Source: Malacoraja senta (Eukaryota). From it: a DNA stretch of 64,000 nt. The stretch is from positions 69,316,001 through 69,380,000 of the forward strand of contig CM075981.1 in NCBI GenBank assembly GCA_038087875.1, read 5' to 3'. Both the position numbers and the translations under genes were made by a program. Under the pieces are notes generated by a model. That model made no database searches and was not told where the DNA came from. It worked only from the letters and a program-made list of their open reading frames with translations. Shown piece by piece: positions 1 to 45,924 of this stretch (positions within the stretch are counted from its first letter, which is position 1; every line of letters begins with the position of its first letter).

Positions 1-475
1 TAAAAATATAATGGGTAAATGAAAATCATCATCTTTGAATTTTTACTGTGAGAGTTAAGGTAGAGTTCCAAGGTTTATGAGTTTTTACATAAATGCCATT
101 TGAAAGGATTCCCATATCATTGCAAGCTTGAGCATTCACAGGCAAAGGCTTGAGCATTCAAAATTGAAACACATCCCTGTTCAGATTAATGGAGACACAA
201 GGAATGCAGATGCTGGTTTACAAAAAAGACTCAAAGTGCTGGAGTAACTCAGTGGGTCAAGCAACATCTCTGGAGAACATGGATAGGTGACGTTTCAGGT
301 CAGGACCATGTTCTCCAGAGATGCTGTATGACCCGCTGATTTACCCCAACATTTTGTGTCCTGTCAAATTAGTCTTAGGGCTTGAAATTATTGGTTTTAA
401 CTGATCCATTATTTTTTTAAATTGTAAAAATCATGTTTTCGACTACAGATAATATTCCATACTACCAATAAATGT

Positions 476-1060
476 CAATACAATACAATACAATACAATA
501 CAATACCATTTATTGTCATTTGAACCTCAAATGAGGTTCAAACAAAATTTGGTTTCTGCAGCTATACAAACAAGTAAAAAGAACCAAGACACAACACAAT
601 TTACACAAACATCCATCACAGCGAATCTCCTCCTCGCTGTGATGGAAGGCAAAGTCTTATCTCTCCCCTGCACTCCCCATTCTCCTCCCGATGTCAGAGT
701 CAGAGCCCCCGGCGGGCGATGGAAAATAAGTCCCGCGGCCATTAAAGCCGCGCCGGGCGATGCAAGGCCGCCCTCCGGGTCTGGATGTTGGAGCCTCCGG
801 TAGCGCTAGCAAGTCCATCGGCCATTTAAAGCCGCGCCGGGCGATGTAAGACCCTGCTCCAGGTCATCTTCAACCCCGCAACTCGGGCGGGAGAAGTTGC
901 CGTTGCGGGAGCCCCGAAAAGCAGTCTCCCACCAGGGACCCGCGAGCTCCCGATGTTACCGTCCACCAGACCTGCGGCTGGAGCCTCCAATCTCCGGGGT
1001 CGGGTCACAGCCGCGCGTCACCGCAGCTCTCCACGCTCCGAACTCGACCAATCACATGGA
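476..1060 (-). mobile_element. GC-rich non-coding retroelement with (TATTG)n tail
   Basis: (CAATA)n at ~476-505 adjoining TTTATTGTCA (TGACAATAAA on the minus strand); CpG-rich body; shares CTGTG..GGAAGGCAA..GT with the 26858 and 36375 elements. Confidence 0.65.
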
Positions 1061-1528
1061 ATTTAAATTTTCTTTCAAAATTCTACAATTGGCTTTCAAA
1101 TAGTATATTTTGATTTATTGATGCTGATTGTGGCAAAAAAGGCAAAAGTGTAGCATAAAAGAGATTTACAAGATTACACGATGGAAAATGAAAATCATGT
1201 CGGAGAAATAATGAAGAGGATATCTGAATTAGCTCATTGGTAGCACAGAAATATCCTCTCTATCGTTATCTCCAATACAACGTGTAGGATTTCATAGCAC
1301 CTTCACACTGTATTGTCCATAAAATGTAAAATCCAGTTTCCACTTGTGAAGAAATGCCGAGGTCACATATCAGGAGTGAAACTAAAATTATTGAACATGA
1401 GGAAGAGGACGATGTTGGTCATAATTATGAGATTGGGAACCTGAATGTAGATCAGCCAGAGGAAGGAAAGCCTCTTACAGCACCTTCTTTACCCATAGTA
1501 TGGGTAGCGCTACTACAACATGATACTT

Positions 1529-1582
1529 GGGGTGGAAAATTGCAACCTTCACGTGGTCCGCCCTGTTTTGACGAATGCAATC
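1529..1582 (+). ncRNA. Minimal HDV-like ribozyme (copy A)
   Basis: P1 GGGGUGG(1529-35)/CCGCCCU(1558-64) with G1-U wobble; P2 AUUGCA(1539-44)/UGCAAU(1576-81); P3 ACC/GGU; L3 UUCACGU; G1565 available for P1.1; vestigial P4; J4/2 C1572-GAA. Confidence 0.85.
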
Positions 1583-1669
1583 AACCCGTCATGCACAATC
1601 AAATAAGATCAAGTAGAACAAGTTGTCCTACAACTTTAGGCTGTGCACGCCATACACAAGAAGAAGAAG
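1529..1669 (+). mobile_element. Short non-autonomous retroelement (ribozyme-headed SINE/SIDE-like), copy A
   Basis: Flanked by AACATGATACTT (1517-1528) and AACGTGATACTT (1670-1681); ends in (GAA)n; near-identical inverted copy at 4042-4186. Confidence 0.9.
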
Positions 1670-4041
1670 AACGTGATACTTGCGTTCCTAAAGAACCTTG
1701 TATTATAGAAAACCATGTTCTGAAGACAATTGTGTCAATGGGGACCTGTGTCAGATTCGTTATATCAGTTATTTTTTGTGCAAGAGTTTCAAGTTCAGAT
1801 TTGTTACTGCAAGCCTAAAATACTGTGGGTTGTTTGTTACATTGTTTAAAAGAGTATCATTGCACAAGCATCAATAGAAGCGATAGCTTGTCTATTTAAA
1901 TGACCTTCTGCGGTGAAACTAGCAACTGTGTTCTTCAGAGACAATGGTGTCTGATTGCTGAAGGGAGGTTACATGTAAAACGGTTTCTTCCAACACTGAA
2001 TTTTTTTTCCAAGACAGCTTTTTTTTTGTTTGTCAATCTCCAAAGTAACTTATAAATAGTTCTCTGACTACTGATCAAAATCACATTGCAATCAATTCAA
2101 CCCAAAGAAAATAAATAGTGTTCCCTAGTTCATCGATCACATTATATCTAATTCATATTATGGAAACGCACATAATAGCAGAACCGCAGGTTTTTCCATT
2201 CATTAATTTTCCTGCATTAATTATACCTTAGATCAAATTTCAAAGGCAAAAGGTGCTATGCTTTAAATCTCTGGATTATTTCATCATGTGTTGCCTGAGC
2301 AAGGTCAGAATCAACATTGTATTCAGCTGCTTTGGCGATGAAAACAGGTTTCTGTGCAATTTCCAGACTGTTAAGTACAGCATCAGTGGAAGTGAAAGGA
2401 ATTCCAACACAGCATACTGTCAGGTTACACATGGTATTTTCAAGGTGCAGTTGCACAGTAACCACAGGTTTTAAAAGTTACTGTTACCATGTGCAGTAAA
2501 CAGTACCTGATTTATGTTGTCTGGGTTTAATTTGGACCACAGGATACAGGAGTCAGTTTACATGCCAATATCTTTGCTATGCCAATGAATCTTAAGTAAT
2601 CAAGAATGCAGATGGCTGAATCCACTTTCTTGGCACATTTAAATAATTTCTGGGTCTGTTTAAAACATGTCCATGAAAGACATCTTCTAGACCCTCTCAG
2701 ATTATAAAATAAAACATTCACACCCACCACAGTCTACAAACCATGTAGCAATACATTAAACAGGGAGCGACTCAGAATTCCACTGACCTCGGGTTACAAT
2801 CCTCAATAACCGAGGATTGATATCCAATTTACAGCGCCCCAATCAAGATTCACAACAATGTAAATGTCACACAATTATCCTCGACAAATTAATTACAGAG
2901 CTTGTACATGTAGAACAGCAGCATATGAAGAAAGAGTCTGGGAGCTTTCTCAATATTTTTCATTTAATATAACATAATACAAAAAAGTCTGGCAGTAGCG
3001 CTACAATTCAGAATCTTGCAGTTATCTTGCAACCAGTTTTCACTGTGATCAAGAATAATTCAATTGGCAGTGTGTAAAAATGTCTTTGGACACTAAAACC
3101 TAAAATGCAAGCTATGAGCATCATCCATAACATCCGTTTTACAACAAAACGCACTGTCATTTCACAGCAATTTTTCAAGTAAACTCGGCAGTTTTCAAGA
3201 TGCAAAAGTTTGTACTGCCATCTGGCAAAAAGCACTGAAGGATCAATGTGATACAAACATAAAAATACATGACAATTACATCTCCCAATTAAGAACCGAT
3301 CATCAAACTCTTGTCAGTCATGCTTTTCAAAATATGTTTTGTGCATTTGTGTATCAATTCTTTGCTAGACAACTGATCAATTCTCAGGATTTAGATCACA
3401 TTGTTTTTTAAAAAGGTGAACAGGGCAAAATTGCTTCCAAATTCACAAGAGTATAGAATGGCTCTGAACGCACTCAAATATGTTTGAATGCAAACTTTTG
3501 AGTTCCTGAAATTGCATAATGATACACAATTTGGTAGTAATGCCTTATAAATTTAAAATCTGCATAAATTCAAAAACTGCGAATAGCTGAAGACGATTGT
3601 AACTAAATATGCTGTATTAAACACTGACACTATTGTACCTATGGACTCAGGTTAAGTATAAAGTGATGCTTCACATTGTTCATGTCCATGAAATGGTGAG
3701 ATATTCCTGATTCTGTATTAAGTCGCAGCATGATGGCTCTGATGGTGCACCTGGCCACGTTCTTAAAACCTGCGTGAACCAACTGGGTGGAGATTTTGCG
3801 GACATCTTCAACCTCTAGTTACTAATGTCCGAGTTTCTCACCGTGCCCATGAAGAGCAAGGTGGTATGCCTCAATGACTATCAATCGGTGTGCTTATTTC
3901 CATAGTAATGAAGTGCTTTGAGAGGTTGGTTATGGCTCATATCAACTCTTACCTTGGCAAGGATCTGGACCCACTACAATTTGCTCACCTCCACAACAGA
4001 TCAACCAACGATACCATCTCACTGGCTCTCCACTCTGCGCT

Positions 4042-4186
4042 TCTTTTTCTTCTTCTTGTGTATGGCGTGCACAGCCTAAAGTTGTAGGACAACTTGTTCT
4101 ATTTGATCTTACTTGATTGTGCACGCCAGGTTGATTGCATTCGTCGAAACAGGGCGGACCACGTGAAGGTTGCAATCTCCCACCCC
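4042..4186 (-). mobile_element. Short non-autonomous retroelement (ribozyme-headed SINE/SIDE-like), copy B, inserted in a Rex1/Babar RT
   Basis: Flanked by CACTCTGCGCT (4031-4041) and CAGTCTGCGCT (4187-4197); (GAA)n tail on the minus strand; interrupts the ...LALHSAL|DHLDN... RT sequence. Confidence 0.9.
4133..4186 (-). ncRNA. Minimal HDV-like ribozyme (copy B, sense to LMF1 transcription)
   Basis: Minus strand reads GGGGUGG GA GAUUGCA ACC UUCACGU GGU CCGCCCU G UUUCGA C GAA UGCAAUC, giving P1 7 bp, P2 7 bp, P3 3 bp, L3, minimal P4 with UUCG loop and a catalytic-C-type CGAA. Confidence 0.87.
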
Positions 4187-7100
4187 CAGTCTGCGCTGGA
4201 CCACTTGGACAATAGGGACATGTGCGTCAGCCTGTTTGTTGTTCGACTACAATTCAACATCATCATCCCCTCCAGATTTGTTATCAAATTCACGGATTTC
4301 TACTTATCCCTGTGCACTGTATCGTTGACTTCCTCACTGGCAGACCACAAACAGTACAAATTGGCAACAACACATCCTCCTTTATAACCATCAGCACAGG
4401 TGTATCTCCAGGCTATATGCTCAATCACTTGCTCTACTCACTCAATGCTCATTACTGTGTAGCCAGACACCATTCCAATGCCATCATTACCCTGAAGATG
4501 CCACCACTGTTTGAATGAATATTGGGTAATGATAAGCCAGAGTTTAGGAGGGAGATGGAAAATCTGATTGAATGGCAAGGAGTGCCTTTGGTTGAACTAA
4601 AGACTACGGGTCATTGCACTAGTATTGTTACTATCAGTTCTTTTTTTTTGTTCATTACATATATTCTCTGTGTTTATTGGATTTACTGACCGCTTACATT
4701 GCCTCAAGTAATTTCATTCCTCTGTTCCTGGTACATATGACAATTAAACACCCTTTACTCTTGACACTCAACGTCACAACGGGACACCATTACAAGCAGC
4801 CAGTAACAACTCCTGAAACGAAGCTAAAGAGGACTGATGATTTACTTCAAGGTAGAATTGCCAAATAATTCAAAATACTGTCTAAATGTGTTATCAGTGA
4901 CAAACAAGGCCAGAGGAGTTGCTGCACAGTTCAAGGTTTCTTCTTCAGGAGCAAAAGAATTGTCATTCAATACCTTGATCTGAAGAAAGGTCCAGACCCA
5001 AAACATCACCTATCCATGTTCTCCAGGGTTGCTGAGTGACCCATTGAGTTACTTCAGCTTTGTTTTTGTCTTGCCATTCAATACATCGGCTCAGATTTAT
5101 AAAAGTGACTCTGCAAATGGAGCATCAAACAGGCCATTTAATTTAAGCAGAAACTTCTGTATTTACTCAGAAGACCAAATAGAGGCCAAAAGAGCCTACA
5201 AGATCACTGCTTATGCAGTGTTTGAATTTATCCCAATCAACTTTGTCTCACCCTTTCAATGTATTCCTCTTGCTTTATCCCTCATGGGGTTACTTAGCTT
5301 CTCTTAAAACACATCCACGCTACGCAACTCAATGATTCCTTTTTAGATTGAGTTTGAAATGAATTCCAAGTTAACCGTAGTATGAAAATTAGAAGTGTAC
5401 ACAACAAATTAACGAGTACAGGCCAAAATTGATATTCTATCTCATTCCCAATCCTCTTAGCACCCAACCGTTCTCTGTGATCCTCTCTCTAGCCCATTGC
5501 CCTGTCCCAATTCTCCAACTCTGATTGATGACAATCAGGGCAAAACTCCAAACCCAACCAAGTTGCATTTATAGTTTTGAAATAGCATTTTCTACTTTTA
5601 AAAATGGATGGCAAAACAAACCACGATAAAAGTAATCAATAAATGTAAAAAGTCTCAATTTTACAAAGTGATGTCATCTGCAATTGCCTCCATCAACCCA
5701 ATAATCCATTTTGTTCAGATTATCTTTAGAACTGAGTATAAAAAGTCTCAAATTTGTTGTTGAAAAGAAATCATAGGCAGCATACAACAAACTTTGAGAC
5801 CAAGGCTTCCATTTTTCCTGCTTCTGCAAATCCACTGAAGCAAAATATAAAATCCCATTATTCATTCAATAAACTGGCATCAAACCCACTTATTATTTTA
5901 CGGAGTAATGAATTAAATACTCTGCTCAGCTTGTTGCATTTGTGCCACCAGCGCATAATCGTGATTCTAGATTTCAAAGAAAGCACAATACTAGAATGTG
6001 CAATTTGCTTGATCTAGTGACTCGGAGATCGAGAACTGCACACATCTATGTAAATCTCTTTATTTAAAAAAAGAATGTAACCAATGTCAAAAATAAACTC
6101 AACCAAAAACTATTTATTGGCCCAGATTCACCTGGCTATCCTTCATTGAGGAATTTGGCAGTGATGAGTCACTTACGATCACAGCTCACCTCCTTGGATG
6201 TTTTTTATAGATCACACTGCTGCTGGACTACTCAAAATGAGGTGGTAATTTCTCACAGATCCCCAACACTTTTGATGGGAAATCAGCTGGATGAAGTTAA
6301 AATAGAGCCAAAATAGAGAGGGAGAAAGAACGGCTTCACAAGCTATCAAAACCTGCTACTCGCCTTCTTTGTTCCGCTCCATTTTCACAATACACTGCCT
6401 TGGACCACATCGATGAAAATGAAGTTAGCTTCAGCAAGAAAATTCCCATTAGGAAATCAAATCAAATCGACTTCCTAGATTGCTCTGTGGAAATTGCTTT
6501 GGTTGACAGTGCTGCATTACGGATACTATGCCAGTGGAAGTTGTAGCTATGGTAACTATAATATCCACTTCCCTGCAATTGGACCTAGCCTAGTGCACTA
6601 CCGTTTGCAGATGTAATACAGATACAATACAGAAATAATTCCAAACAATTGCCTTCTTTCTTTGTGAGTAAGCTTTAAAATTAAGGCATAGGTCCACACA
6701 GCAAAAATACTAACACAATAAAAAGAAAACATAAGAGAAAATGAGGCAATTTTAGGAAAGTCCAAATCATGATTTTCAAAGGCATGTAGACTGAAGTAAG
6801 AATGAAGGCTGTGGAACCACACCGACTGAGGGCATTCAACAAGAGCAATAGAAGTGTTATCAGTACCATTTAGTAACCACTAATCTGTTATGGCCAAACT
6901 CTAATTATTTCTATAATTGTTAGAATTACTGATCACACTTTAAGTTTGTTTATGTTTTTCTATCTGTAAGCCACAAAATCCCATACAGTTTAAGACAATC
7001 ATTCTTAGTTTGTGTAGGAAGGAACTGCAAATGCTGGTTTAAACCGAAGATAGACGCAAAATGCTGTAGTAACTCAGCGGGACAGGCAGCATCTCAGCAT

Positions 7101-7290
7101 CCAGAGATGCTGCCTGTCCCACTGACGGATTCCAGCATTTTATCCAGAGATGCTGCCTGTCCCACTGAGTTACTCTAGCATTTTGTGTCTATCTTAGTTG
7201 TTCTCCTCGGGTTGTTTATTGGCACAACCTCAATGATTAAACAGAAACTGGAAGTTTCATGGACAGTATCCTCAGCCAGGTGGCTTACTA

Positions 7291-7610
7291 TTAGTTTAGT
7301 TTACTTTACTTTAGTTTAGAGATACAGCGCGAAAACAGGCTCTTCGGCCCACCGAGTCCACGGCGACTATCGATCTCCGCACACTAACACTATCGGATAC
7401 ACGCAGGGGACAATTTACATTTATACCAAGCCAATTAGCCTACAACCCTATACGTCTTTGGATTGTGGGAGGAAACTGGATCTTCCCAGAGAAAACCCCA
7501 CGCAGGTCACAGGGAGAATGTACAAACTCCGTACAGACAGTACCCATAGTCAGGATCGAACCGGTTCTCTGGCGCTGTAAGGCAGTAACTCACCACTGTG
7601 CTACCATGCC
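7291..7610 (-). mobile_element. tRNA-derived V-SINE (HE1-like)
   Basis: Minus strand shows a tRNA-like head (GGTAGCACAGTGG..GGTTCGATCC), V-domain GGAGTTTGTACATTCTCCCTGTGACCTGCGTGGG..GTTTCCTCCCACA, and a (CTAAA)n tail. Confidence 0.85.
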
Positions 7611-9178
7611 TGGATGACTGTGGCTAAAGGGATCAGGGGGTATGAAGAGAAGGCAGGTACAGTATACTGAGTTGGATGATCAGCCATGATCATATTGAAT
7701 GGCGGTGCAGGCTCGAAGGGCCGAATGGCCTACTCCTGCACCTATTTTCTATGTTTCTATGCCGCCCCCAATTGTATCCTGTGTCCTACAAATGCAGTGA
7801 ACAACTGTGTCCCAAATAGAACAAATAGGATCTACTGACCCAATGTGCATCACACCACCAACCCATCCCCATCATCCATCCCACACCAACCATTCAATTT
7901 CCAAATTCACCAACACTGGGTCAATTTGTTCCATCCTTGCTTTGTGTATTGTTTTAGAATTGAAGGACAAATGAACAAGCATTGGTTTCTGAGTGAACAA
8001 AAAATATTAGAGGATATAATCAATGCAATCAAGCAATTAACTCCAATCATATATTCATGTTCAAAGAAACATCAACCGATGTGAATCAACTAATCCAGGT
8101 TGCTGCTGTGTGAATTGGCATAAAATCCAGCCAATTGTTTGACTGTGTGGTTTCAATTCTCTATTTTACATGTTTTAAATAGATGTGGAATGAATGATGA
8201 AGCGATTATGTTTGACTTTAGTTTCAGTATATTTGTGAAAGTAGGAGTGAACAGAAGTCACTGTCCATTTCCTGCTTTTTGTTGGAATCAATCATATTAG
8301 TGGAAAATAAATTTATTTTGTTCATTACTGTAAGGACAACGGGCATCATAGCCAATATGTTTTTCCCTATAACCACCCTGCCGTAAATAGGGCCTGGACT
8401 CAGCAGTTAACAGTGAACTAACAATGGACTACACTCTATCACCAAAAATTATAATGCTCAAAGACAGAGCTCTTAACCTAGTCACTGAAGGCTGAAATGG
8501 CAAGATTACAGTGGACCTGGATCCGAGTGAAAATGTTTGATAAAATATCCAATCTGAGTAACTGCATTTTTCAACGCCACATGACTGGAAATGTATATTT
8601 GGAATGGGTTGAGATACTGTTTGTTACCAGTTATTTTAATCACCCTGGAAATTAGACCATGTACTTTCAGTCTTGAAGCAACAAGCATTCACCAGTTTAT
8701 CATGTATAATTCAACATCAGCCTTCGAGTACCAATCATTTAGTGAGCTGCCAGGAGAAAGTGGGTCACATCGTTCCGATTCAGATTTGTCATTCCAAGAA
8801 AAAACACAATTTTTCAGCACGGCAATCTTTGAACCTGTGCAATATTATGTGCTGTCACAAATTTTAATAGATCTCAGTGGTTTGTTGCAAAACACTCTGA
8901 GGCTGGCTTCTGAACCCACTCCTTCTGACCAGTGACTTGGTGAGACGCACTGTCATTCACAAATGTAAATCGCCTTCCAATAATTTATTCTGTGGTAATT
9001 CTACTGGGCGCTGGATGAACTGGATGACTGTATAGGCATGAGAGCAAAGATCTTATGGTCTTTGCCTGAGAGGCAGGGTCAATTAGTCAGGAGCTCCAAG
9101 GAAGGAGCCAAAAGAGCTTACAAAAAGTATAGAAAAAGGCAAACTTCCTATAATTGGAGCCATTGGCACGGATACAAA

Positions 9179-9515
9179 AAGATAGACACAAAATGCTGGA
9201 GTAACTCAACGGGACAGGCAGCATCTCTGGAGCGAATGAATGGGTGATGTTTTGGGTTGAGACTCTTCTTCAGACTGAGAGTCAGGGGAGAAGGACTCTA
9301 GAGATTATGGAAGGATAAAACGACAGATGAAAGCCGATGCTGATAAGGAAATGTAGAATGGTTCATTGTTAGCTGAGGGGAAGGTGACAACGAGGCATAC
9401 AATCAGTAATATCAAATCAGGAGGACAGTAGAACTAGACGAAGACCTAGCATGGGGAAGGGACGGAGAGGGAAAGGAGGGGTTACTTGAAGTTAGATAAA
9501 TCAATATTCATACCG
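9179..9515 (-). mobile_element. Penelope-like element 3' end/pLTR (hammerhead core decayed)
   Basis: Reverse complement of 61445-61800. Confidence 0.75.
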
Positions 9516-9657
9516 TACATACAAATTCTGATCTGCAACTCCTTGAATTATGGCCTGATTTTAGTATTCTAGCAGTTAGATAAATCAATATTCATACCGT
9601 ACATACAAATTCTGATCTGCAACTCCTTGAATTATGTCCTGATTTTAGTATTCTAGC
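9490..9657 (+). repeat. 84-bp tandem duplication
   Basis: 9490-9573 and 9574-9657 are identical except for one substitution (GGCC/GTCC). Confidence 0.95.
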
Positions 9658-9849
9658 ATAGCATTAATCCATGTAAATGAACCAATCATCTAATTGAACT
9701 GCTCCGAGACATTATACCCTGCTCAAAAACGTTGGAGATCTATGTTTTAGATTGCTTCTTCAAACAAAGTGGACCATAGCTACAGAGCCATTGATGTTCT
9801 TCATGCACGTTTAATATTGCAAATGATCTTCGCAATGCAGATCACAGAC

Positions 9850-12480
9850 AGAACTGAAGCAACAGGGTTGTCATACTGAGTGACTTTAACATCTTCAATT
9901 TTGACTGGGGCTTCCTTCATACAAGACAGGACAGCATGTGTCCGTGATATCTAGGAGGGTTACTTGAAAGAGTATGTGGATAGTCCTATAAAAGGAGAGA
10001 CCATATTGGACCTTGTATTGGGAAACGAGCCTGGTCAGTTGACTAACGTTTTAATGGAAGAGCATTTTGGGAACAGTGATCACAACTCCTGAAGTTTTAA
10101 AATAGTTATGATTAGGATAGGTCTGGACTTTGGAGAACGTACTAAATTGGGGGAGGGAAAATTACAACACTATTAGGCGGGAGCTCGGATGAGTAAATTG
10201 GGAGCAGCTGTTATTGGGTAAGTACGCATCTGACATGTGTGATTCATTTAAAGACCAGCTGATCTTGTTCCAGTAAGGAGGTGGGACATACAAATGGCAC
10301 GGTAAGGGAACTTTGGATGAAAATCCAATTTGATCAAAAAGGAAAAGAAGCATATGTAAGGTTTAGGAAGAGAAAAAAAGACAGGGCCTTTGAGGAATAT
10401 AAAGAAAGCAAGAAAGAACAAGCAGGGAATAAGAAGGACAAAGGGGACCGTGAAATGTCCTTTGCAATTAGGGCTAAAGAACCATTTTATACAAACAAGA
10501 GGGTAATTAATGAGAGGGTAGGACCACTCAAGAATGAAGGAGGGATGCTTGGAATGAGAGGATGTGGGCAAGGTATTAAACGTGTACTTTGCACTGGTGT
10601 TCACCAAGGAGAATGACATGGAGGAGATTGAGATCAGTATATTATTATGCTAGGGCATTTTGCGATCAAAATGAGGTGGGGTTGGGTTTCTTGAAGAGTT
10701 TCAATGTGGATAAGACCCTAGTGCAAGTTATGCCTTGCAAACTTAATTGAGATTCTTTTGAGGAGCTGACAAAAGTGATTAATGAAGGTAGGGACATGGA
10801 CGTTGCCTACATGGACTTTAGTAAATGATTCGACAAGTTCCCCCTTGATAGACTGATCCAGAAGATTGTCATTCTGGTTGGTGGTCTGTGACCAGTGGTG
10901 TTCTACAGGGATCAGTGCTGGGACTTCCGTAGTTTGTGATATATCTTTTCATATATATATATGTCCATGCCTCACAATGAAACCCAATGTTCCATTAGAT
11001 AGACACAAACAACTAGAATAACTCAGCTTGTCAGGCAGCATCACTGGAGAAAAAGGATGGATGACATTTCGGGACCCTTCTTCAGAATGATGCTGCCAGA
11101 CGTTTTCTCCAGAGATGCTGCCTGACCCCAAGTTACTCCAGTACTTTGTGTCTATCTTTTGTACAAACCAGCATCTGCAGTTCCTTGTTTCTACATTGTT
11201 CCATTACGCTTTCCTGCTGCTTGCTGAGTTTTCACAGCAATTCTCGTTTCATGTACGAGGACTCCAGATCACTCTACATTACAACATTTTGTAGCCTCAG
11301 TCCATGCAAACATGGCATTTATTTTCCTCCCCAGGTGGATGACGTCATATGTTCCCTCATTATTTTCCATATAAAGGGCTGCACTGTGGGATTGAAGATG
11401 CAGAGGAGCTCCCAGGAAACACAGACTAAGCAAGTCATGGATATGGCAAATGGAGCATAATGTAAAAAAATTTGAGTTTATCCACTTTGGTAGTAAAAGC
11501 AGTAAACCAAGGTGTTTGGTTCTAATAGTGAGAGTTTAAAAGGTGTTGGTTGTTAGGAGGACTTGTGTATCCTTCTGCAGTAAAGCTCTGTTAATCTGGC
11601 ATGTTTGGGTTATTGATGGTGACAGACTGAAAAATTCTCTGGATTATTGTATGTTATTCCTATTAATATTTGAACACACTTTAAATTAGATTTACACAGG
11701 AGAATAAATATTTCAGAGAATCTGGTAAGTTTAAGGGGAGCTCATGAATCCTGGATCCCAATGCGTTGAAAGGAACACAAGCATCAGCATCTCGTGAGCT
11801 GCCAAACCATCTGGATTTCCAAACAATCGGATAGCAGATTATTAAAGTTTTTACTGTCCATGAATTGCCAAAAGTGAATGTGCAGTTATAGCATGCAATT
11901 AGGAAGGCAAACCATACATTGCCCTTTCTTGTAAGAGAATTTAAGTACAGCAATCTCACTGCATTTATAAGGGCCTTGTTCAAACCGCACTTCGAATATC
12001 GTGCATAGGTCTAGTGTTCCTTTCTAAGAAATGACATGTTTGTGACAAAATAGTTTATCAAATTGATTCTTAGGATTGAACAAGTTGTTTCTTTGAGGAG
12101 AGGTTAAGTACAGTGGGCCAATATTCCCATAGTTAAGAAGAATGAGAGAAAATCTCAAGGATGTTGTATATTTCGTTATGGAGCCTGGCAGGATTATGTA
12201 GGGGTGGCATTTCCCCTTGCTGGAATGTTTAAATCTAAGGATCACAATCTCAAAATAAATGGCTGGCCACTCAGAACTGAGATGAGGAAAATTTCTTCAT
12301 GGATCCTTGGTTATTTGGAGACCCATATATTCAAGTCTGGGACATAGATTTTGGATTCTAAGATAACTAAGGAATATGGGTAGTACAGGAAAGCGGCACA
12401 GAGGTAAAATATTAACCATGCTCTTAATGAATGGTAGAGCCCACTGAATGAGTTTCTCCAAATTCTATTTCTTATGCTCT
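9850..12480 (+). mobile_element. Cluster of decayed CR1-clade LINE fragments (interrupted by a Penelope-derived hairpin at ~10998-11195)
   Basis: Endonuclease-like (GDFN, LDLVL, SDH) and RT-like remnants; CR1-type 3' end near 12410-12480. Confidence 0.7.
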
Positions 12481-12879
12481 TTGGTCATCCCAAGACTCTA
12501 CTGCAAGCCATCTTCAGGGATTAAATATATTTTTCATGGCACTGTTTTTTGAGTGGTCGCAGATGAATATCTCAATGTTTTAACATGGACAAAGTGTATT
12601 GTGCCCATATGTACAATATCCAATGAAACTAATTTAACTAATCGAAAATTAAGGCTAATTTCTTTTCCCTTTTCACATTGGTAAAAAGCAGTCATCACAT
12701 TACATTATTGCAGATCACAGCCAGGTGAAAGACAATTTTTTTGTGTAGACAGGGTTTGGGAGCGTGATGACAAGAAATGTTACAAATCTCTAGAACTGCA
12801 TGCAGCCTTTCGTTTTTCATCAAACTTTAGGGAGGAGCCCTCTGGCTGGGCTAAGAAGCCAATATATTTATGTACTGGA

Positions 12880-13094
12880 CACAAAAACCTGGAGTAACTC
12901 AGCGGGACAGGCAGCATCTCTGGAGAGAAGGAATGGGTGACGTTACAGGTCGAGACCCTTTTTCAGACTGAAGAAGGGTCTCGACCCGAAACGTCACCAT
13001 TCCTTCTCTCCAGAGATGCTGCCTGTCCCGCTGAGTTACTCCAGCTTTTTGTGTCTATCTTCGGTTCAAACCAGCATCTGTCGTTCCTTCCTAC
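12880..13094. mobile_element. Palindromic Penelope-derived mini-element with hammerhead core (intact on + at 12968-12995)
   Basis: ~88-bp inverted arms centred on TTCAG-A-CTGAA (12962-12972); 16-bp TSD ATATTTATGTACTGGA at 12864-12879 and 13095-13110. Confidence 0.88.
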
Positions 13095-13396
13095 ATATTT
13101 ATGTACTGGAGATGTGCCCTCAATTGTAGTCTCAGCTTGAATACAAACTAGATGTAATAGACTGAACAAACTGAAGGATATAATTAAATTAGATTATCCC
13201 ATGCAGGAGTTCTCATGAAGCTTTCTATCCAAGTCACGTCAAACCTCAACACCAAATTTTGAATCCTACTGCTATCTGGCTTTTAAACATGGCAGCATTT
13301 CTTCATGCAACAGAAAGTAGTAATTAACTAATTAGAAAGAGAAACAAACAAAAAAATCCCACTAGGCCTGTACGATAAAGTAGTCGCATCACTCAC

Positions 13397-13706
13397 CAAA
13401 TCTGACCGATGTTCACCAACGAATGATACAGGATCCATAAGATGAACATGATAATCATATTGGCACATCCAGTGACCAATACAAACACCGATAGTCCCAT
13501 TCCCAACAAAGCAATATTGTTTAGATGTACGTCCATGTCAGACCAATCCAGGAACCACAGAATTGTTGGTGCATAACTGAAAGCTTCAATGCCAACTTTA
13601 CCCCCAGCATATTGTTGAACCTTCCGTAAATACAGATGGCTTGGTAGCAATCCTTCCTTTCCCAGTAACTGCCTGTTTTGGTGGTAAGCAACAGAAAAGG
13701 CCATGA
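13397..13706 (-). CDS. LMF1: Lipase maturation factor 1, coding exon 2 (310 bp)
   Basis: Translates (F)MAFSVAYHQNRQLLGKEGLLPSHLYL...SYAPTILWFLDWSDMD...GCANMIIMFILWILYHSLVNIGQI(W), matching LMF1 (AFHQNKQLIGDRGLLP...DWSDM...GCANM...SLVNVGHVW). Polypyrimidine tract plus CAG acceptor (13709-13707) and GTGAGT donor at 13396. Phase is compatible with exon 1. Confidence 0.97.
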
Positions 13707-30674: not shown

Positions 30675-30874
30675 AGTAAATGAACGCTATGGAGCGCAGC
30701 AGAACTATCCTGGTGAGCCAGAAGGTTCCCGGCTGCAGCCCGGCGCACTCGGGGCATGCCGTGACCCTGCCGCTGGCCGTCTTTGCCGGGTTGCAGCGCC
30801 CCATCTGCCCCATCAGCCGCCCCCGTGTCCCCAGCAACCCGCCGCACTCGCAGCCCCACCACGGGCGCCGCCAT
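30675..30874 (-). CDS. LMF1: Lipase maturation factor 1, coding exon 1 (contains an apparent 1-nt frameshift)
   Basis: ATG at 30874 in strong context (GCCAAG ATG G) gives MAAPVVGLRVRR, like the MAAP..LRRR N-terminus of vertebrate LMF1. A different frame gives GLQPGTFWLTRIVLLRSIAFIY (LMF1 GTFWLTRIVLL motif) ending at a phase-1 GTGAGT donor at 30674. In-frame ATGs for that frame are at 30813 and 30804. Confidence 0.9.
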
Positions 30875-45629: not shown

Positions 45630-45924
45630 NNNNNNNNNNNNNNNNNNNNNNNNNNNNNNNNNNNNNNNNNNNNNNNNNNNNNNNNNNNNNNNNNNNNNNN
45701 NNNNNNNNNNNNNNNNNNNNNNNNNNNNNNNNNNNNNNNNNNNNNNNNNNNNNNNNNNNNNNNNNNNNNNNNNNNNNNNNNNNNNNNNNNNNNNNNNNNN
45801 NNNNNNNNNNNNNNNNNNNNNNNNNNNNNNNNNNNNNNNNNNNNNNNNNNNNNNNNNNNNNNNNNNNNNNNNNNNNNNNNNNNNNNNNNNNNNNNNNNNN
45901 NNNNNNNNNNNNNNNNNNNNNNNN
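45630..45924. other. Assembly gap (295 N)
   Basis: Run of N about 1 kb upstream of the SOX8 ATG. Confidence 1.

What the first reader, a model, noticed from the sequence alone, without database searches (positions are those of the whole stretch)
4133..4186. Intact HDV-like ribozyme sense to the LMF1 pre-mRNA (CPEB3-like arrangement)
Seen: copy B is on the minus strand ~9 kb downstream of LMF1 exon 2, so it is inside the LMF1 transcript in sense orientation, and it is the better-paired copy (7-bp P2, UUCG loop). Established: the mammalian CPEB3 intronic HDV-like ribozyme cleaves pre-mRNA in competition with splicing. Inference: this copy could cut LMF1 pre-mRNA co-transcriptionally and release an element RNA. 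Two potential dampers are visible: the -1 nucleotide is G (4187), which extends the G run and allows a P1 register shift, and copy A lies antisense 2.4 kb further along the transcript and could pair with it.
Basis: partly seen in the sequence, partly recalled or inferred. Interest (0 to 1): 0.75.

Follow-up and report, generated by a model that had tools for sequence, protein, structure and literature searches.

The report
Ribozyme-headed mini-retroposon in LMF1 intron
A 146-base jumping element in an intron of a cartilaginous fish's LMF1 gene starts exactly at the predicted cut site of a very small hepatitis-delta-type self-cutting RNA and points the same way as the gene, so it may nick the gene's pre-mRNA. 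It is one of tens of thousands of such copies, not a device of the gene, and cutting has not been shown.

Summary
Window 4133-4186 (minus strand) fits every core part of an HDV/CPEB3-type double pseudoknot. It lies 9.2 kb past the donor of LMF1 exon 2 on the same strand. The -1 base is G (4187), and a 93% identical inverted copy A lies 2.4 kb further along the transcript.

The "ribozyme" is the head of a 146-nt SINE-like retroposon (4041-4186). It has a (GAA)n-type tail and a 10-nt target-site duplication, and it sits inside an older repeat. The family reaches about 50-60 thousand times single-copy depth in three organisms, and hundreds of contigs end exactly at 4186. This scan has found the family many times already, including sense copies in other introns (PFDN4, SLTM, CAVIN1, AHCYL1).

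- **P4:** there is effectively none, and the "UUCG loop" adds no stability.
- **Rfam:** the HDV-family models align end to end but below threshold.
- **Register-shift damper:** not supported (-5.2 against -11.7 kcal/mol).
- **Antisense damper:** real in principle (-262 kcal/mol), but the partner is made about 2.5 kb later.
- **RNA test:** none was possible, because the runs I laid were DNA.

Verdict: a new member of a known kind, a promoter-less retroposon freed from host transcripts by a 5' HDV-like ribozyme. Cleavage of LMF1 pre-mRNA is plausible but untested, and a regulatory role is unlikely.

The parts
4133..4186 (-). 54-nt minimal (P4-less) HDV/CPEB3-type ribozyme fold of copy B; predicted cut between 4187 and 4186. 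P1 4186-4180/4157-4151; P2 4177-4171/4139-4133; P3 4170-4168/4160-4158; L3 4167-4161; G37 4150; linker 4149-4144; catalytic C44 4143 in J4/2 4143-4140.
   Evidence: pairings. RF00622 19.8 bits (gathering 35) aligned with G1 at 4186; RF02682 14.4 bits on exactly 4133-4186; descriptor against shuffles and catalytic-C controls.
4041..4186 (-). Whole retroposon copy B (146 nt): ribozyme head, 3' domain hairpin (11-bp stem 4128-4118 / 4073-4063 around the inner hairpin GUUGU-CCU-ACAAC), and purine tail GAAGAAGAAAAAGAA (4055-4041).
   Evidence: summed contig depth about 60,000 times single copy, and 169/162/315/301 contigs in four runs stop matching exactly at 4186.
4187..4196 (-). Upstream target-site duplication GCGCAGACTG; its last base is the -1 G.
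   Evidence: The reading frame of the surrounding old repeat runs on across the insertion.
4031..4040 (-). Downstream target-site duplication GCGCAGAGTG (9 of 10 identical to the upstream copy).
1529..1671 (+). Copy A of the same retroposon, antisense to LMF1. Ribozyme part 1529-1582 (P2 6 bp; C41U). TSD TGATACTT at 1521-1528 and 1674-1681. Absent from the orthologous contigs of two related organisms.
   Evidence: records 17 and 24 jump from 1516 to 1670.
13397..13706 (-). LMF1 exon 2 (AG acceptor at 13708-13707, GTGAGT donor from 13396).
   Evidence: The best full-length relatives carry Pfam LMF1 PF06762 and are named lipase maturation factor 1 by their sources.
30676..30795 (-). Upstream LMF1 coding exon (aligns to residues about 22-57 of LMF1 proteins).
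3896..4400 (+). Older high-copy repeat, with a decayed reverse-transcriptase-like reading frame on the plus strand, into which copy B inserted.
   Evidence: frame ...LALHSA|LDHLDN... continuous apart from the duplicated TSD; depth of thousands, and paralogues that join about 4035-4038 to 4190-4197 without the insert. Pfam did not recognise the short pieces; the RT reading rests on my own knowledge of the motif.

Best explanation
Window 4041-4186 (minus strand) is a little-decayed copy of a very abundant, promoter-less, SINE-like non-LTR retroposon. Its first 54 nt form a minimal, P4-less HDV-type self-cleaving ribozyme.

The copy landed by target-primed reverse transcription (10-nt TSD) in an older repeat inside the intron after LMF1 exon 2, in the same orientation as the gene.

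Proposed mechanism for the family:
1. Pol II read-through of a host transcript makes the element RNA.
2. The ribozyme cuts immediately 5' of G1 and so defines the element's 5' end.
3. The reverse transcriptase of a partner LINE recognises the 3' hairpin and (GAA)n tail and copies the RNA into new sites.

For this copy, some LMF1 pre-mRNA molecules are probably cut between 4187 and 4186. That would leave a 2',3'-cyclic phosphate on the exon 1-exon 2-intron piece and a 5'-OH on an RNA that begins with the element. This would be a by-product of transposon biology. Any effect on LMF1 output is likely small and is not a CPEB3-like adaptation of the host.

Shown: the anatomy, the insertion, the abundance, the exact 5' end and the orientation. 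Inferred: catalysis, transcription through the site in this organism, and the partner LINE.
For: - Fold: all core HDV features are present. L3 (UUCACGU), J1/4 (GU) and J4/2 (CGAA) are identical to the CPEB3 consensus, column for column. The CPEB3 core features were checked in PMC4836649.
- Rfam: two HDV-family models align end to end on exactly these coordinates.
- Chance: only these two loci in the window fit a generic descriptor, against 0.03 per shuffle.
- 5' end: the TSDs abut G1 in both copies, and hundreds of contigs in four runs stop matching at 4186.
- Mobility: copy A is missing from the orthologous site in two related organisms, so the family moved recently.
- State of copy B: where it differs from copy A it keeps the CpGs, the G10-C54 pair and the perfect 11-bp 3' stem, so it is probably close to the master sequence.
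- Host gene: LMF1 exons are on the same strand and no later exon lies in 1-13396. RNA runs of related species hold exon 2.
- Precedent: RTE and baggins elements and some SINEs use HDV-like ribozymes to leave intronic co-transcripts (PMC6765202). Minimal drzs without P4 self-cleave in vitro (bioRxiv 10.1101/2023.06.13.544163).
Against: - No cleavage assay and no RNA data. The runs laid have flat depth across unique intron sequence, so they are DNA.
- Rfam scores are below gathering (19.8 against 35; 14.4 against 44), and nothing was found in the blind 64-kb and 9-kb searches.
- No covariation could be tested, with only two near-identical copies in reach.
- With 20-120 nt of native upstream flank, the nested MFE prefers alternative pairings by 0.9-4.7 kcal/mol over a fold constrained to P1+P3. 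P2 and tertiary contacts are not counted in that comparison.
- The next LMF1 exon lies outside the window, so 'intron' rests on the gene needing its later domains.
- The partner LINE was not found in the window.
Confidence: 0.62

Rival explanations
1. The fold is there, but this copy is silent in its context. Misfolding with the native flank, slow chemistry of a P4-less core with a weak one-pair P1.1, or pairing with antisense copy A would keep LMF1 pre-mRNA essentially uncut. The copy would be just neutral intronic transposon debris.
For: - Alternative nested folds with the upstream flank are 0.9-4.7 kcal/mol better than P1+P3 alone.
- An upstream 12-bp decoy for the P4/J4/2/P2 3' strand (4254-4241) scores -10.5 kcal/mol against -7.4 for P2.
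- P1.1 has one G-C pair plus a U-U, which in CPEB3 is described as flexible (PMC4836649).
- The B x antisense-A duplex scores -262 kcal/mol.
- Tens of thousands of copies, many sense in introns, are tolerated.
Against: - The decoy energy is ordinary: 31% of shuffled flanks do as well.
- The native fold gains P2 and tertiary contacts that the comparison does not count.
- The same weak P1.1 core works in CPEB3, with a co-transcriptional half-life of 2-3 min (PMC10919898).
- Copy A's complementary part is made about 2.5 kb after copy B.
Confidence: 0.28
2. A host-adapted, CPEB3-like regulatory ribozyme: LMF1 has kept this sense ribozyme to tune its own splicing or mRNA output.
For: - Same geometry as CPEB3: a sense ribozyme in a long second intron, kilobases from both exons.
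- The core is identical to CPEB3 in L3, J1/4 and J4/2.
Against: - It is a TSD-flanked copy of a repeat present at about 50-60 thousand times single-copy depth.
- Sister copies sit in sense in unrelated genes.
- The neighbouring copy A is a lineage-specific insertion.
- There is no sign of conservation beyond that of a young repeat.
Confidence: 0.04
3. The sharp 5' end comes from transcription initiation (for example a Pol III internal promoter as in ordinary SINEs), and the HDV-like fold is coincidental.
For: - Weak A-box-like (element position 5) and B-box-like (position 37) strings with typical spacing, each with 3 mismatches in 9 specified bases.
- One chance hit of the control descriptor in the window shows that such folds can arise by chance.
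Against: - No A or B box at 2 mismatches or fewer.
- All seven independent core features are present and the core is identical to CPEB3.
- The descriptor hits 0.03 loci per shuffle.
- Two HDV-family covariance models align full-length.
Confidence: 0.05

Closest known systems
HDV-like ribozymes at the 5' end of promoter-less non-LTR retrotransposons and their short derivatives (R2 and its SIDEs, RTE, baggins, L1Tc/NARTc)
   Same: - The ribozyme is the first nucleotides of the element.
- The cleavage site is the element's 5' end.
- The flanks differ between copies.
- The element depends on read-through host transcription, often from introns.
- Non-autonomous short versions exist (PMC6765202, PMC3414825, PMC3185411).
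   Different: - Vertebrate (cartilaginous fish) host.
- Extremely short element (146 nt) at very high copy number.
- The ribozyme lacks P4.
- Dispersed insertion with 8-11-nt TSDs rather than the rDNA-specific insertion of R2.
- The partner LINE was not identified here.
Mammalian CPEB3 intronic ribozyme (Rfam RF00622)
   Same: - Sense orientation in a long second intron.
- Positions 1-38 can be numbered identically: P1 with G1.U36, 3-bp P3, L3 UUCACGU, P1.1 of C22-G37 plus U21-U38, and a 4-nt J4/2 CGAA with the catalytic C.
- The known consequence is competition between cleavage and co-transcriptional splicing (PMC10919898).
   Different: - CPEB3 is single-copy and conserved across mammals, has a full P4, and has shown effects on its mRNA.
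- This is a young multicopy transposon insertion, scores 19.8 bits against a gathering score of 35, has no P4, and has no functional data.
Minimal (P4-less) HDV-like ribozymes: drz-Mtgn-1 and the theta ribozymes of gut phages
   Same: About 50-60 nt double pseudoknot with the P4 domain missing. Shown to self-cleave in vitro (bioRxiv 10.1101/2023.06.13.544163).
   Different: Those were reported only from bacteriophage genomes and metagenomes, next to tRNAs. This one heads a eukaryotic retroposon.

Membership tests
HDV-like (delta-like) self-cleaving ribozymes | Nested double pseudoknot: P1 and P2 plus P3 and P1.1 | tested here: met
   P1 7 bp, P2 7 bp, P3 3 bp, P1.1 C22-G37. The MFE of the 54-mer reproduces P1+P3 (-12.4 kcal/mol). 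In silico only.
HDV-like (delta-like) self-cleaving ribozymes | G.U wobble closing P1 at the cleavage site, and a catalytic cytosine first in J4/2 | tested here: met
   G1.U36 and C44 in CGAA, aligned to the CPEB3 model's GCGAA. Descriptor controls with C replaced by A, G or U give 0, 1 and 0 hits in the window.
HDV-like (delta-like) self-cleaving ribozymes | P4 helix | tested here: not met
   Only U38-A43 around UUCG: +5.3 kcal/mol, or +1.7 with G37-C44. P4 is absent from the accepted minimal drzs, so it is not required for membership.
HDV-like (delta-like) self-cleaving ribozymes | Site-specific self-scission giving 2',3'-cyclic phosphate and 5'-OH ends | not testable with these tools
   No RNA data could be laid; the runs used were DNA.
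HDV-like (delta-like) self-cleaving ribozymes | Curated covariance-model threshold (Rfam) | tested here: not met
   RF00622 19.8 bits against 35; RF02682 14.4 against 44. Nothing in the 64-kb or 9-kb searches. The models do not encode P2 and they penalise the missing P4.
HDV-like (delta-like) self-cleaving ribozymes | Covariation supporting the helices across diverged members | not tested
   Only two copies, 93% alike, were in reach. The one P2 difference (G10 to A10) breaks a pair rather than compensating.
Mammalian CPEB3 ribozyme family (RF00622) | Orthologous, conserved single-copy element in the CPEB3 intron of mammals | tested here: not met
   The host gene is LMF1. The element is multicopy and TSD-flanked, and its score is below gathering.
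Ribozyme-headed non-LTR retroposons (R2-SIDE / NARTc / RTE-type) | Element 5' end coincides with the ribozyme cleavage site, with unrelated upstream flanks | tested here: met
   TSDs abut G1 in both copies. In four runs 169-315 contigs per run end their match at 4186, followed by unlike sequence (agreement about 0.35).
Ribozyme-headed non-LTR retroposons (R2-SIDE / NARTc / RTE-type) | Retroposition hallmarks: TSD, 3' simple-repeat or A-rich tail, empty orthologous sites | tested here: met
   TSDs of 10 nt (copy B) and 8-11 nt (copy A); (GAA)n tails. Empty site for copy A in organisms B and C.
Ribozyme-headed non-LTR retroposons (R2-SIDE / NARTc / RTE-type) | An autonomous LINE partner sharing the 5' ribozyme and/or the 3' end | not tested
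No such element in this window.

The most novel reading that the evidence does not exclude
This skate-like genome carries tens of thousands of catalytically competent minimal HDV-type ribozymes, many of them sense in introns such as LMF1 intron 2. Co-transcriptional pre-mRNA self-cleavage would then be a genome-wide layer that host genes must tolerate or exploit. At this locus the inverted pair of copy B and copy A would act as a natural kinetic switch: cut if fast, masked as a 147-bp dsRNA (and perhaps edited) if slow.
Probability: 0.2. Interest if true: 0.65.

Novelty: new member of a known kind. Interest (0 to 1): 0.38.

Why it matters
If the head is active, every sense intronic copy is a natural experiment on how self-cleavage inside an intron competes with splicing. 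So far that question has been addressed in vivo essentially only for the single mammalian CPEB3 ribozyme (PMC10919898). The family would also be a eukaryotic example of the P4-less minimal HDV-like ribozymes that the work I read reports only from phage genomes. The LMF1 copy itself is not special: it is one of many such copies, and nothing suggests that the gene depends on it.

Tried and rejected
- Rfam at gathering on the whole window, and at E<=10 on 9 kb: no ribozyme hit. Hits appeared only in 101-nt searches, so their E-values (0.002; 4e-5) are post hoc. Scaled to the whole window they are near 1.
- RNA evidence: the first run search, asked for RNA, returned runs of unknown kind. After laying them, flat depth across unique intron sequence and contig sets of about 1.2-2.1 Gb showed they are DNA. 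That used the single read-laying run.
- Is copy B present in related organisms? Unresolved. Record 21 departs at 4196, and the joint 4041->4252 is ambiguous.
- Metagenome scan for the 23-nt core: 0 hits.
- Search for more copies or a partner LINE in the window: none.
- Pfam on the LMF1 exon peptide and on the two flanking repeat pieces: nothing. LMF1 identity came instead from full-length relatives.
- Register shift by G(-1): rejected on energy.
- Upstream 'decoy' helix 4254-4241: rejected as special, since 31% of shuffled flanks do as well.
- Pol III A and B boxes: only 3-mismatch strings.
- Literature search for HDV-like ribozymes in sharks: no report of this element in the held library.

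Full report
**1. What is at the coordinates**

On the minus strand, 4186-4133 reads GGGGUGG-GA-GAUUGCA-ACC-UUCACGU-GGU-CCGCCCU-G-UUUCGA-CGAA-UGCAAUC. It fits the HDV-type nested double pseudoknot:
- P1: 7 bp, closed by G1.U36.
- P2: 7 bp.
- P3: 3 bp.
- L3: 7 nt.
- P1.1: C22-G37.
- J4/2: 4 nt, beginning with C44.

The unconstrained MFE of the 54-mer is exactly P1+P3 (-12.4 kcal/mol).

U38-A43 alone costs +5.3 kcal/mol, and with G37-C44 +1.7 kcal/mol. This is a P4-less, minimal form. Minimal HDV-like ribozymes without P4 are an accepted subgroup that cleaves in vitro (bioRxiv 10.1101/2023.06.13.544163).

**2. Is it more than chance?**

Rfam gave nothing at gathering on the whole window, and nothing for this site at E<=10 on 9 kb.
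- On a 101-nt stretch around copy B, CPEB3_ribozyme (RF00622) aligns full-length at 19.8 bits (gathering 35), with the model's G1 on 4186. HDV-F-prausnitzii (RF02682) aligns at 14.4 bits on exactly 4133-4186.
- Copy A gives 25.0 and 17.3 bits.
- These E-values are post hoc. The value of the hits lies in the register of the alignments and in the identity of L3 (UUCACGU), J1/4 (GU) and J4/2 (CGAA) to the CPEB3 consensus.
- The NMR paper on CPEB3 describes the same core: the U20.G25 wobble, a P1.1 of one G-C pair plus a U-U, and a 4-nt J4/2 with the catalytic C (PMC4836649).

A generic descriptor that I wrote requires P1 of 7 bp with G.U, P2 of at least 6 bp, P3 of 3 bp, L3 of 6-8 nt with a C, a G for P1.1, and CNRA before the P2 3' strand.
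- It hits only 1529 (+) and 4186 (-) in both strands of the window.
- It hits 0.03 loci per composition-preserving shuffle, with bases shuffled within 200-nt blocks.
- With the catalytic C changed to A, G or U it hits 0, 1 and 0 times.

**3. What it belongs to**

The 54 nt are the head of a 146-nt element (4186-4041). The element has three parts:
- the ribozyme head;
- a separate 3' domain, with an 11-bp stem at 4128-4118 / 4073-4063 around a small hairpin;
- a GAAGAAGAAAAAGAA tail.

It is flanked by a 10-nt target-site duplication, GCGCAGACTG at 4196-4187 and GCGCAGAGTG at 4040-4031. The -1 G (4187) is therefore simply the last base of the duplicated target.

The element interrupts an older high-copy repeat on the plus strand. 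That repeat's reading frame (...LALHSA|LDHLDN...) runs on across the insertion. Pfam did not recognise these short pieces, so the reverse-transcriptase reading is my own recollection of the motif.

Copy A (1529-1671, plus strand) is the same element, with TSD TGATACTT. The two arms are 147 nt long, 93% complementary and 2372 nt apart.

**4. The family**

I laid contigs of four runs on 1001-7000.
- The runs are DNA. Depth is flat across unique intron sequence: 27, 3.5, 12 and 9.6.
- The element bins sum to about 50-60 thousand times single-copy depth in three organisms. This is a rough figure and not a copy number.
- In the four runs, 169, 162, 315 and 301 contigs stop matching exactly at 4186 and go on with unrelated sequence. 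The family's 5' end is therefore the predicted cleavage site.
- In organisms B and C the orthologous contigs jump from 1516 to 1670. That is an empty site for copy A, so the family was mobile after these lineages split (about 3-4% divergence).
- Whether copy B is shared by these organisms stayed unresolved.

Earlier notes of this scan describe the same family many times in this genome. They include sense copies in introns of PFDN4, SLTM, CAVIN1 and AHCYL1, and none of them shows cleavage. The scan has therefore found this before on other DNA.

**5. The host gene**

- The ORF piece at 13397-13706 (minus strand) finds LMF1 proteins at 56-64% identity.
- Full-length relatives carry Pfam LMF1 PF06762 from about residue 158, that is, after this exon. 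Their sources name them lipase maturation factor 1.
- tblastn places one earlier exon at about 30676-30795 and no later exon in 1-13396.
- The exon has an AG acceptor and a GTGAGT donor.
- The cleavage site therefore lies 9210 nt into the next intron, in sense, with at least 4.2 kb of intron still to come.
- RNA runs of related species hold exon 2. No RNA run of this organism was offered.

**6.

*Register shift.* G(-1) extends the G run, but the shifted register scores -5.2 against -11.7 kcal/mol. The U5.G32 wobble fixes the register. I reject this damper. From my own memory of HDV work, G at -1 is the least favoured base, with a modest effect. I did not check this in a paper.

*Native flank.* With 20-120 nt of upstream sequence, nested MFE folds beat a fold constrained to P1+P3 by 0.9-4.7 kcal/mol. 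P2 (about -7.4) and tertiary contacts are not counted in that comparison.

*Upstream decoy.* Segment 4254-4241 can pair with the 3' third of the ribozyme, C44 included, at -10.5 kcal/mol. However, 31% of shuffled flanks do as well. Flank effects are known for CPEB3 (Chadalavada 2010, as cited in PMC4836649), so they remain an open risk here but not a special feature.

*Antisense copy A.* The duplex would be very stable at -262 kcal/mol. The part complementary to the ribozyme is transcribed about 2.5 kb after copy B. At the 3.5-4.1 knt/min quoted for mammals and the 2-3 min half-life of Cpeb3 (PMC10919898), the two processes would be of similar speed. The damper is therefore real only for a slow ribozyme.

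**7. Which copy is closer to the source?**

Where the two copies differ, copy B keeps:
- the CpGs (C41-G42 and GGCGUG);
- the G10-C54 pair;
- the perfect 3' stem.

Copy A has TpG or CpA and mismatches at those places. Copy B is probably close to the master sequence, and 'intact' is fair.

By the Rfam models, which ignore P2, copy A scores higher than copy B. 'Better copy' therefore rests on one P2 pair.

**8. Mechanism and comparison**

The best reading is the established one for promoter-less non-LTR elements. RTE and baggins elements, and some LINEs and SINEs, are transcribed because they sit in introns, and they free themselves with a 5' HDV-like ribozyme (review PMC6765202). R2 SIDEs and NARTc are short derivatives of this type (PMC3414825, PMC3185411).

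A Pol III start as the origin of the sharp 5' end is unlikely, because A and B boxes appear only at 3 mismatches each.

The 'CPEB3-like arrangement' is a likeness of geometry and of core sequence, not membership in that family. This is a young, TSD-flanked, multicopy insertion.

I give about 0.5 to measurable cleavage of LMF1 pre-mRNA at this copy, and about 0.1 to a meaningful effect on LMF1 output.

**9. Verdict**

- This is a new member of a known kind. At family level the P4-less head in a vertebrate retroposon is a modest variant.
- Nothing here singles out LMF1.
- The decisive data, an in vitro assay and RNA ends, are missing.

Noticed in passing
window 1517-1669 (copy A site): Orthologous contigs of two related organisms (runs X3 and X5) jump from 1516 to 1670. 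They lack copy A and one TSD copy, so this is an empty site and the insertion is lineage-specific.
   Followed up: partly
window 222-360, 4989-5068, 7047-7195: High-copy palindromic repeat units (arms 38-70 nt, 83-89% complementary). They draw spurious sub-threshold hits to miRNA and Plastid-psbJ models. Summed contig depth at 5001-5200 is about 18,000 times single copy. Another note of the scan calls similar units at 12864-13110 hammerhead palindromes.
   Followed up: no
window 4115-4107 (minus strand): The sense element carries a 5' splice-site-like CAA|GUAAGA, a possible cryptic donor inside the LMF1 intron. Copy A has A in place of the G of the GU.
   Followed up: no
window 4196 and 4041-4252: The orthologous contig of organism B stops matching exactly at the outer edge of copy B's TSD and continues with 19 unlike letters. 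A joint 4041->4252 appears at single-copy-like depth in two relatives but also in the window's own organism. The state of copy B in relatives is unresolved.
   Followed up: partly
window 742-781 and 826-865: Two 40-nt GC-rich direct repeats, 85% alike and 84 nt apart.
   Followed up: no
window 45630-45924: Run of N (assembly gap or masked), left untouched.
   Followed up: no
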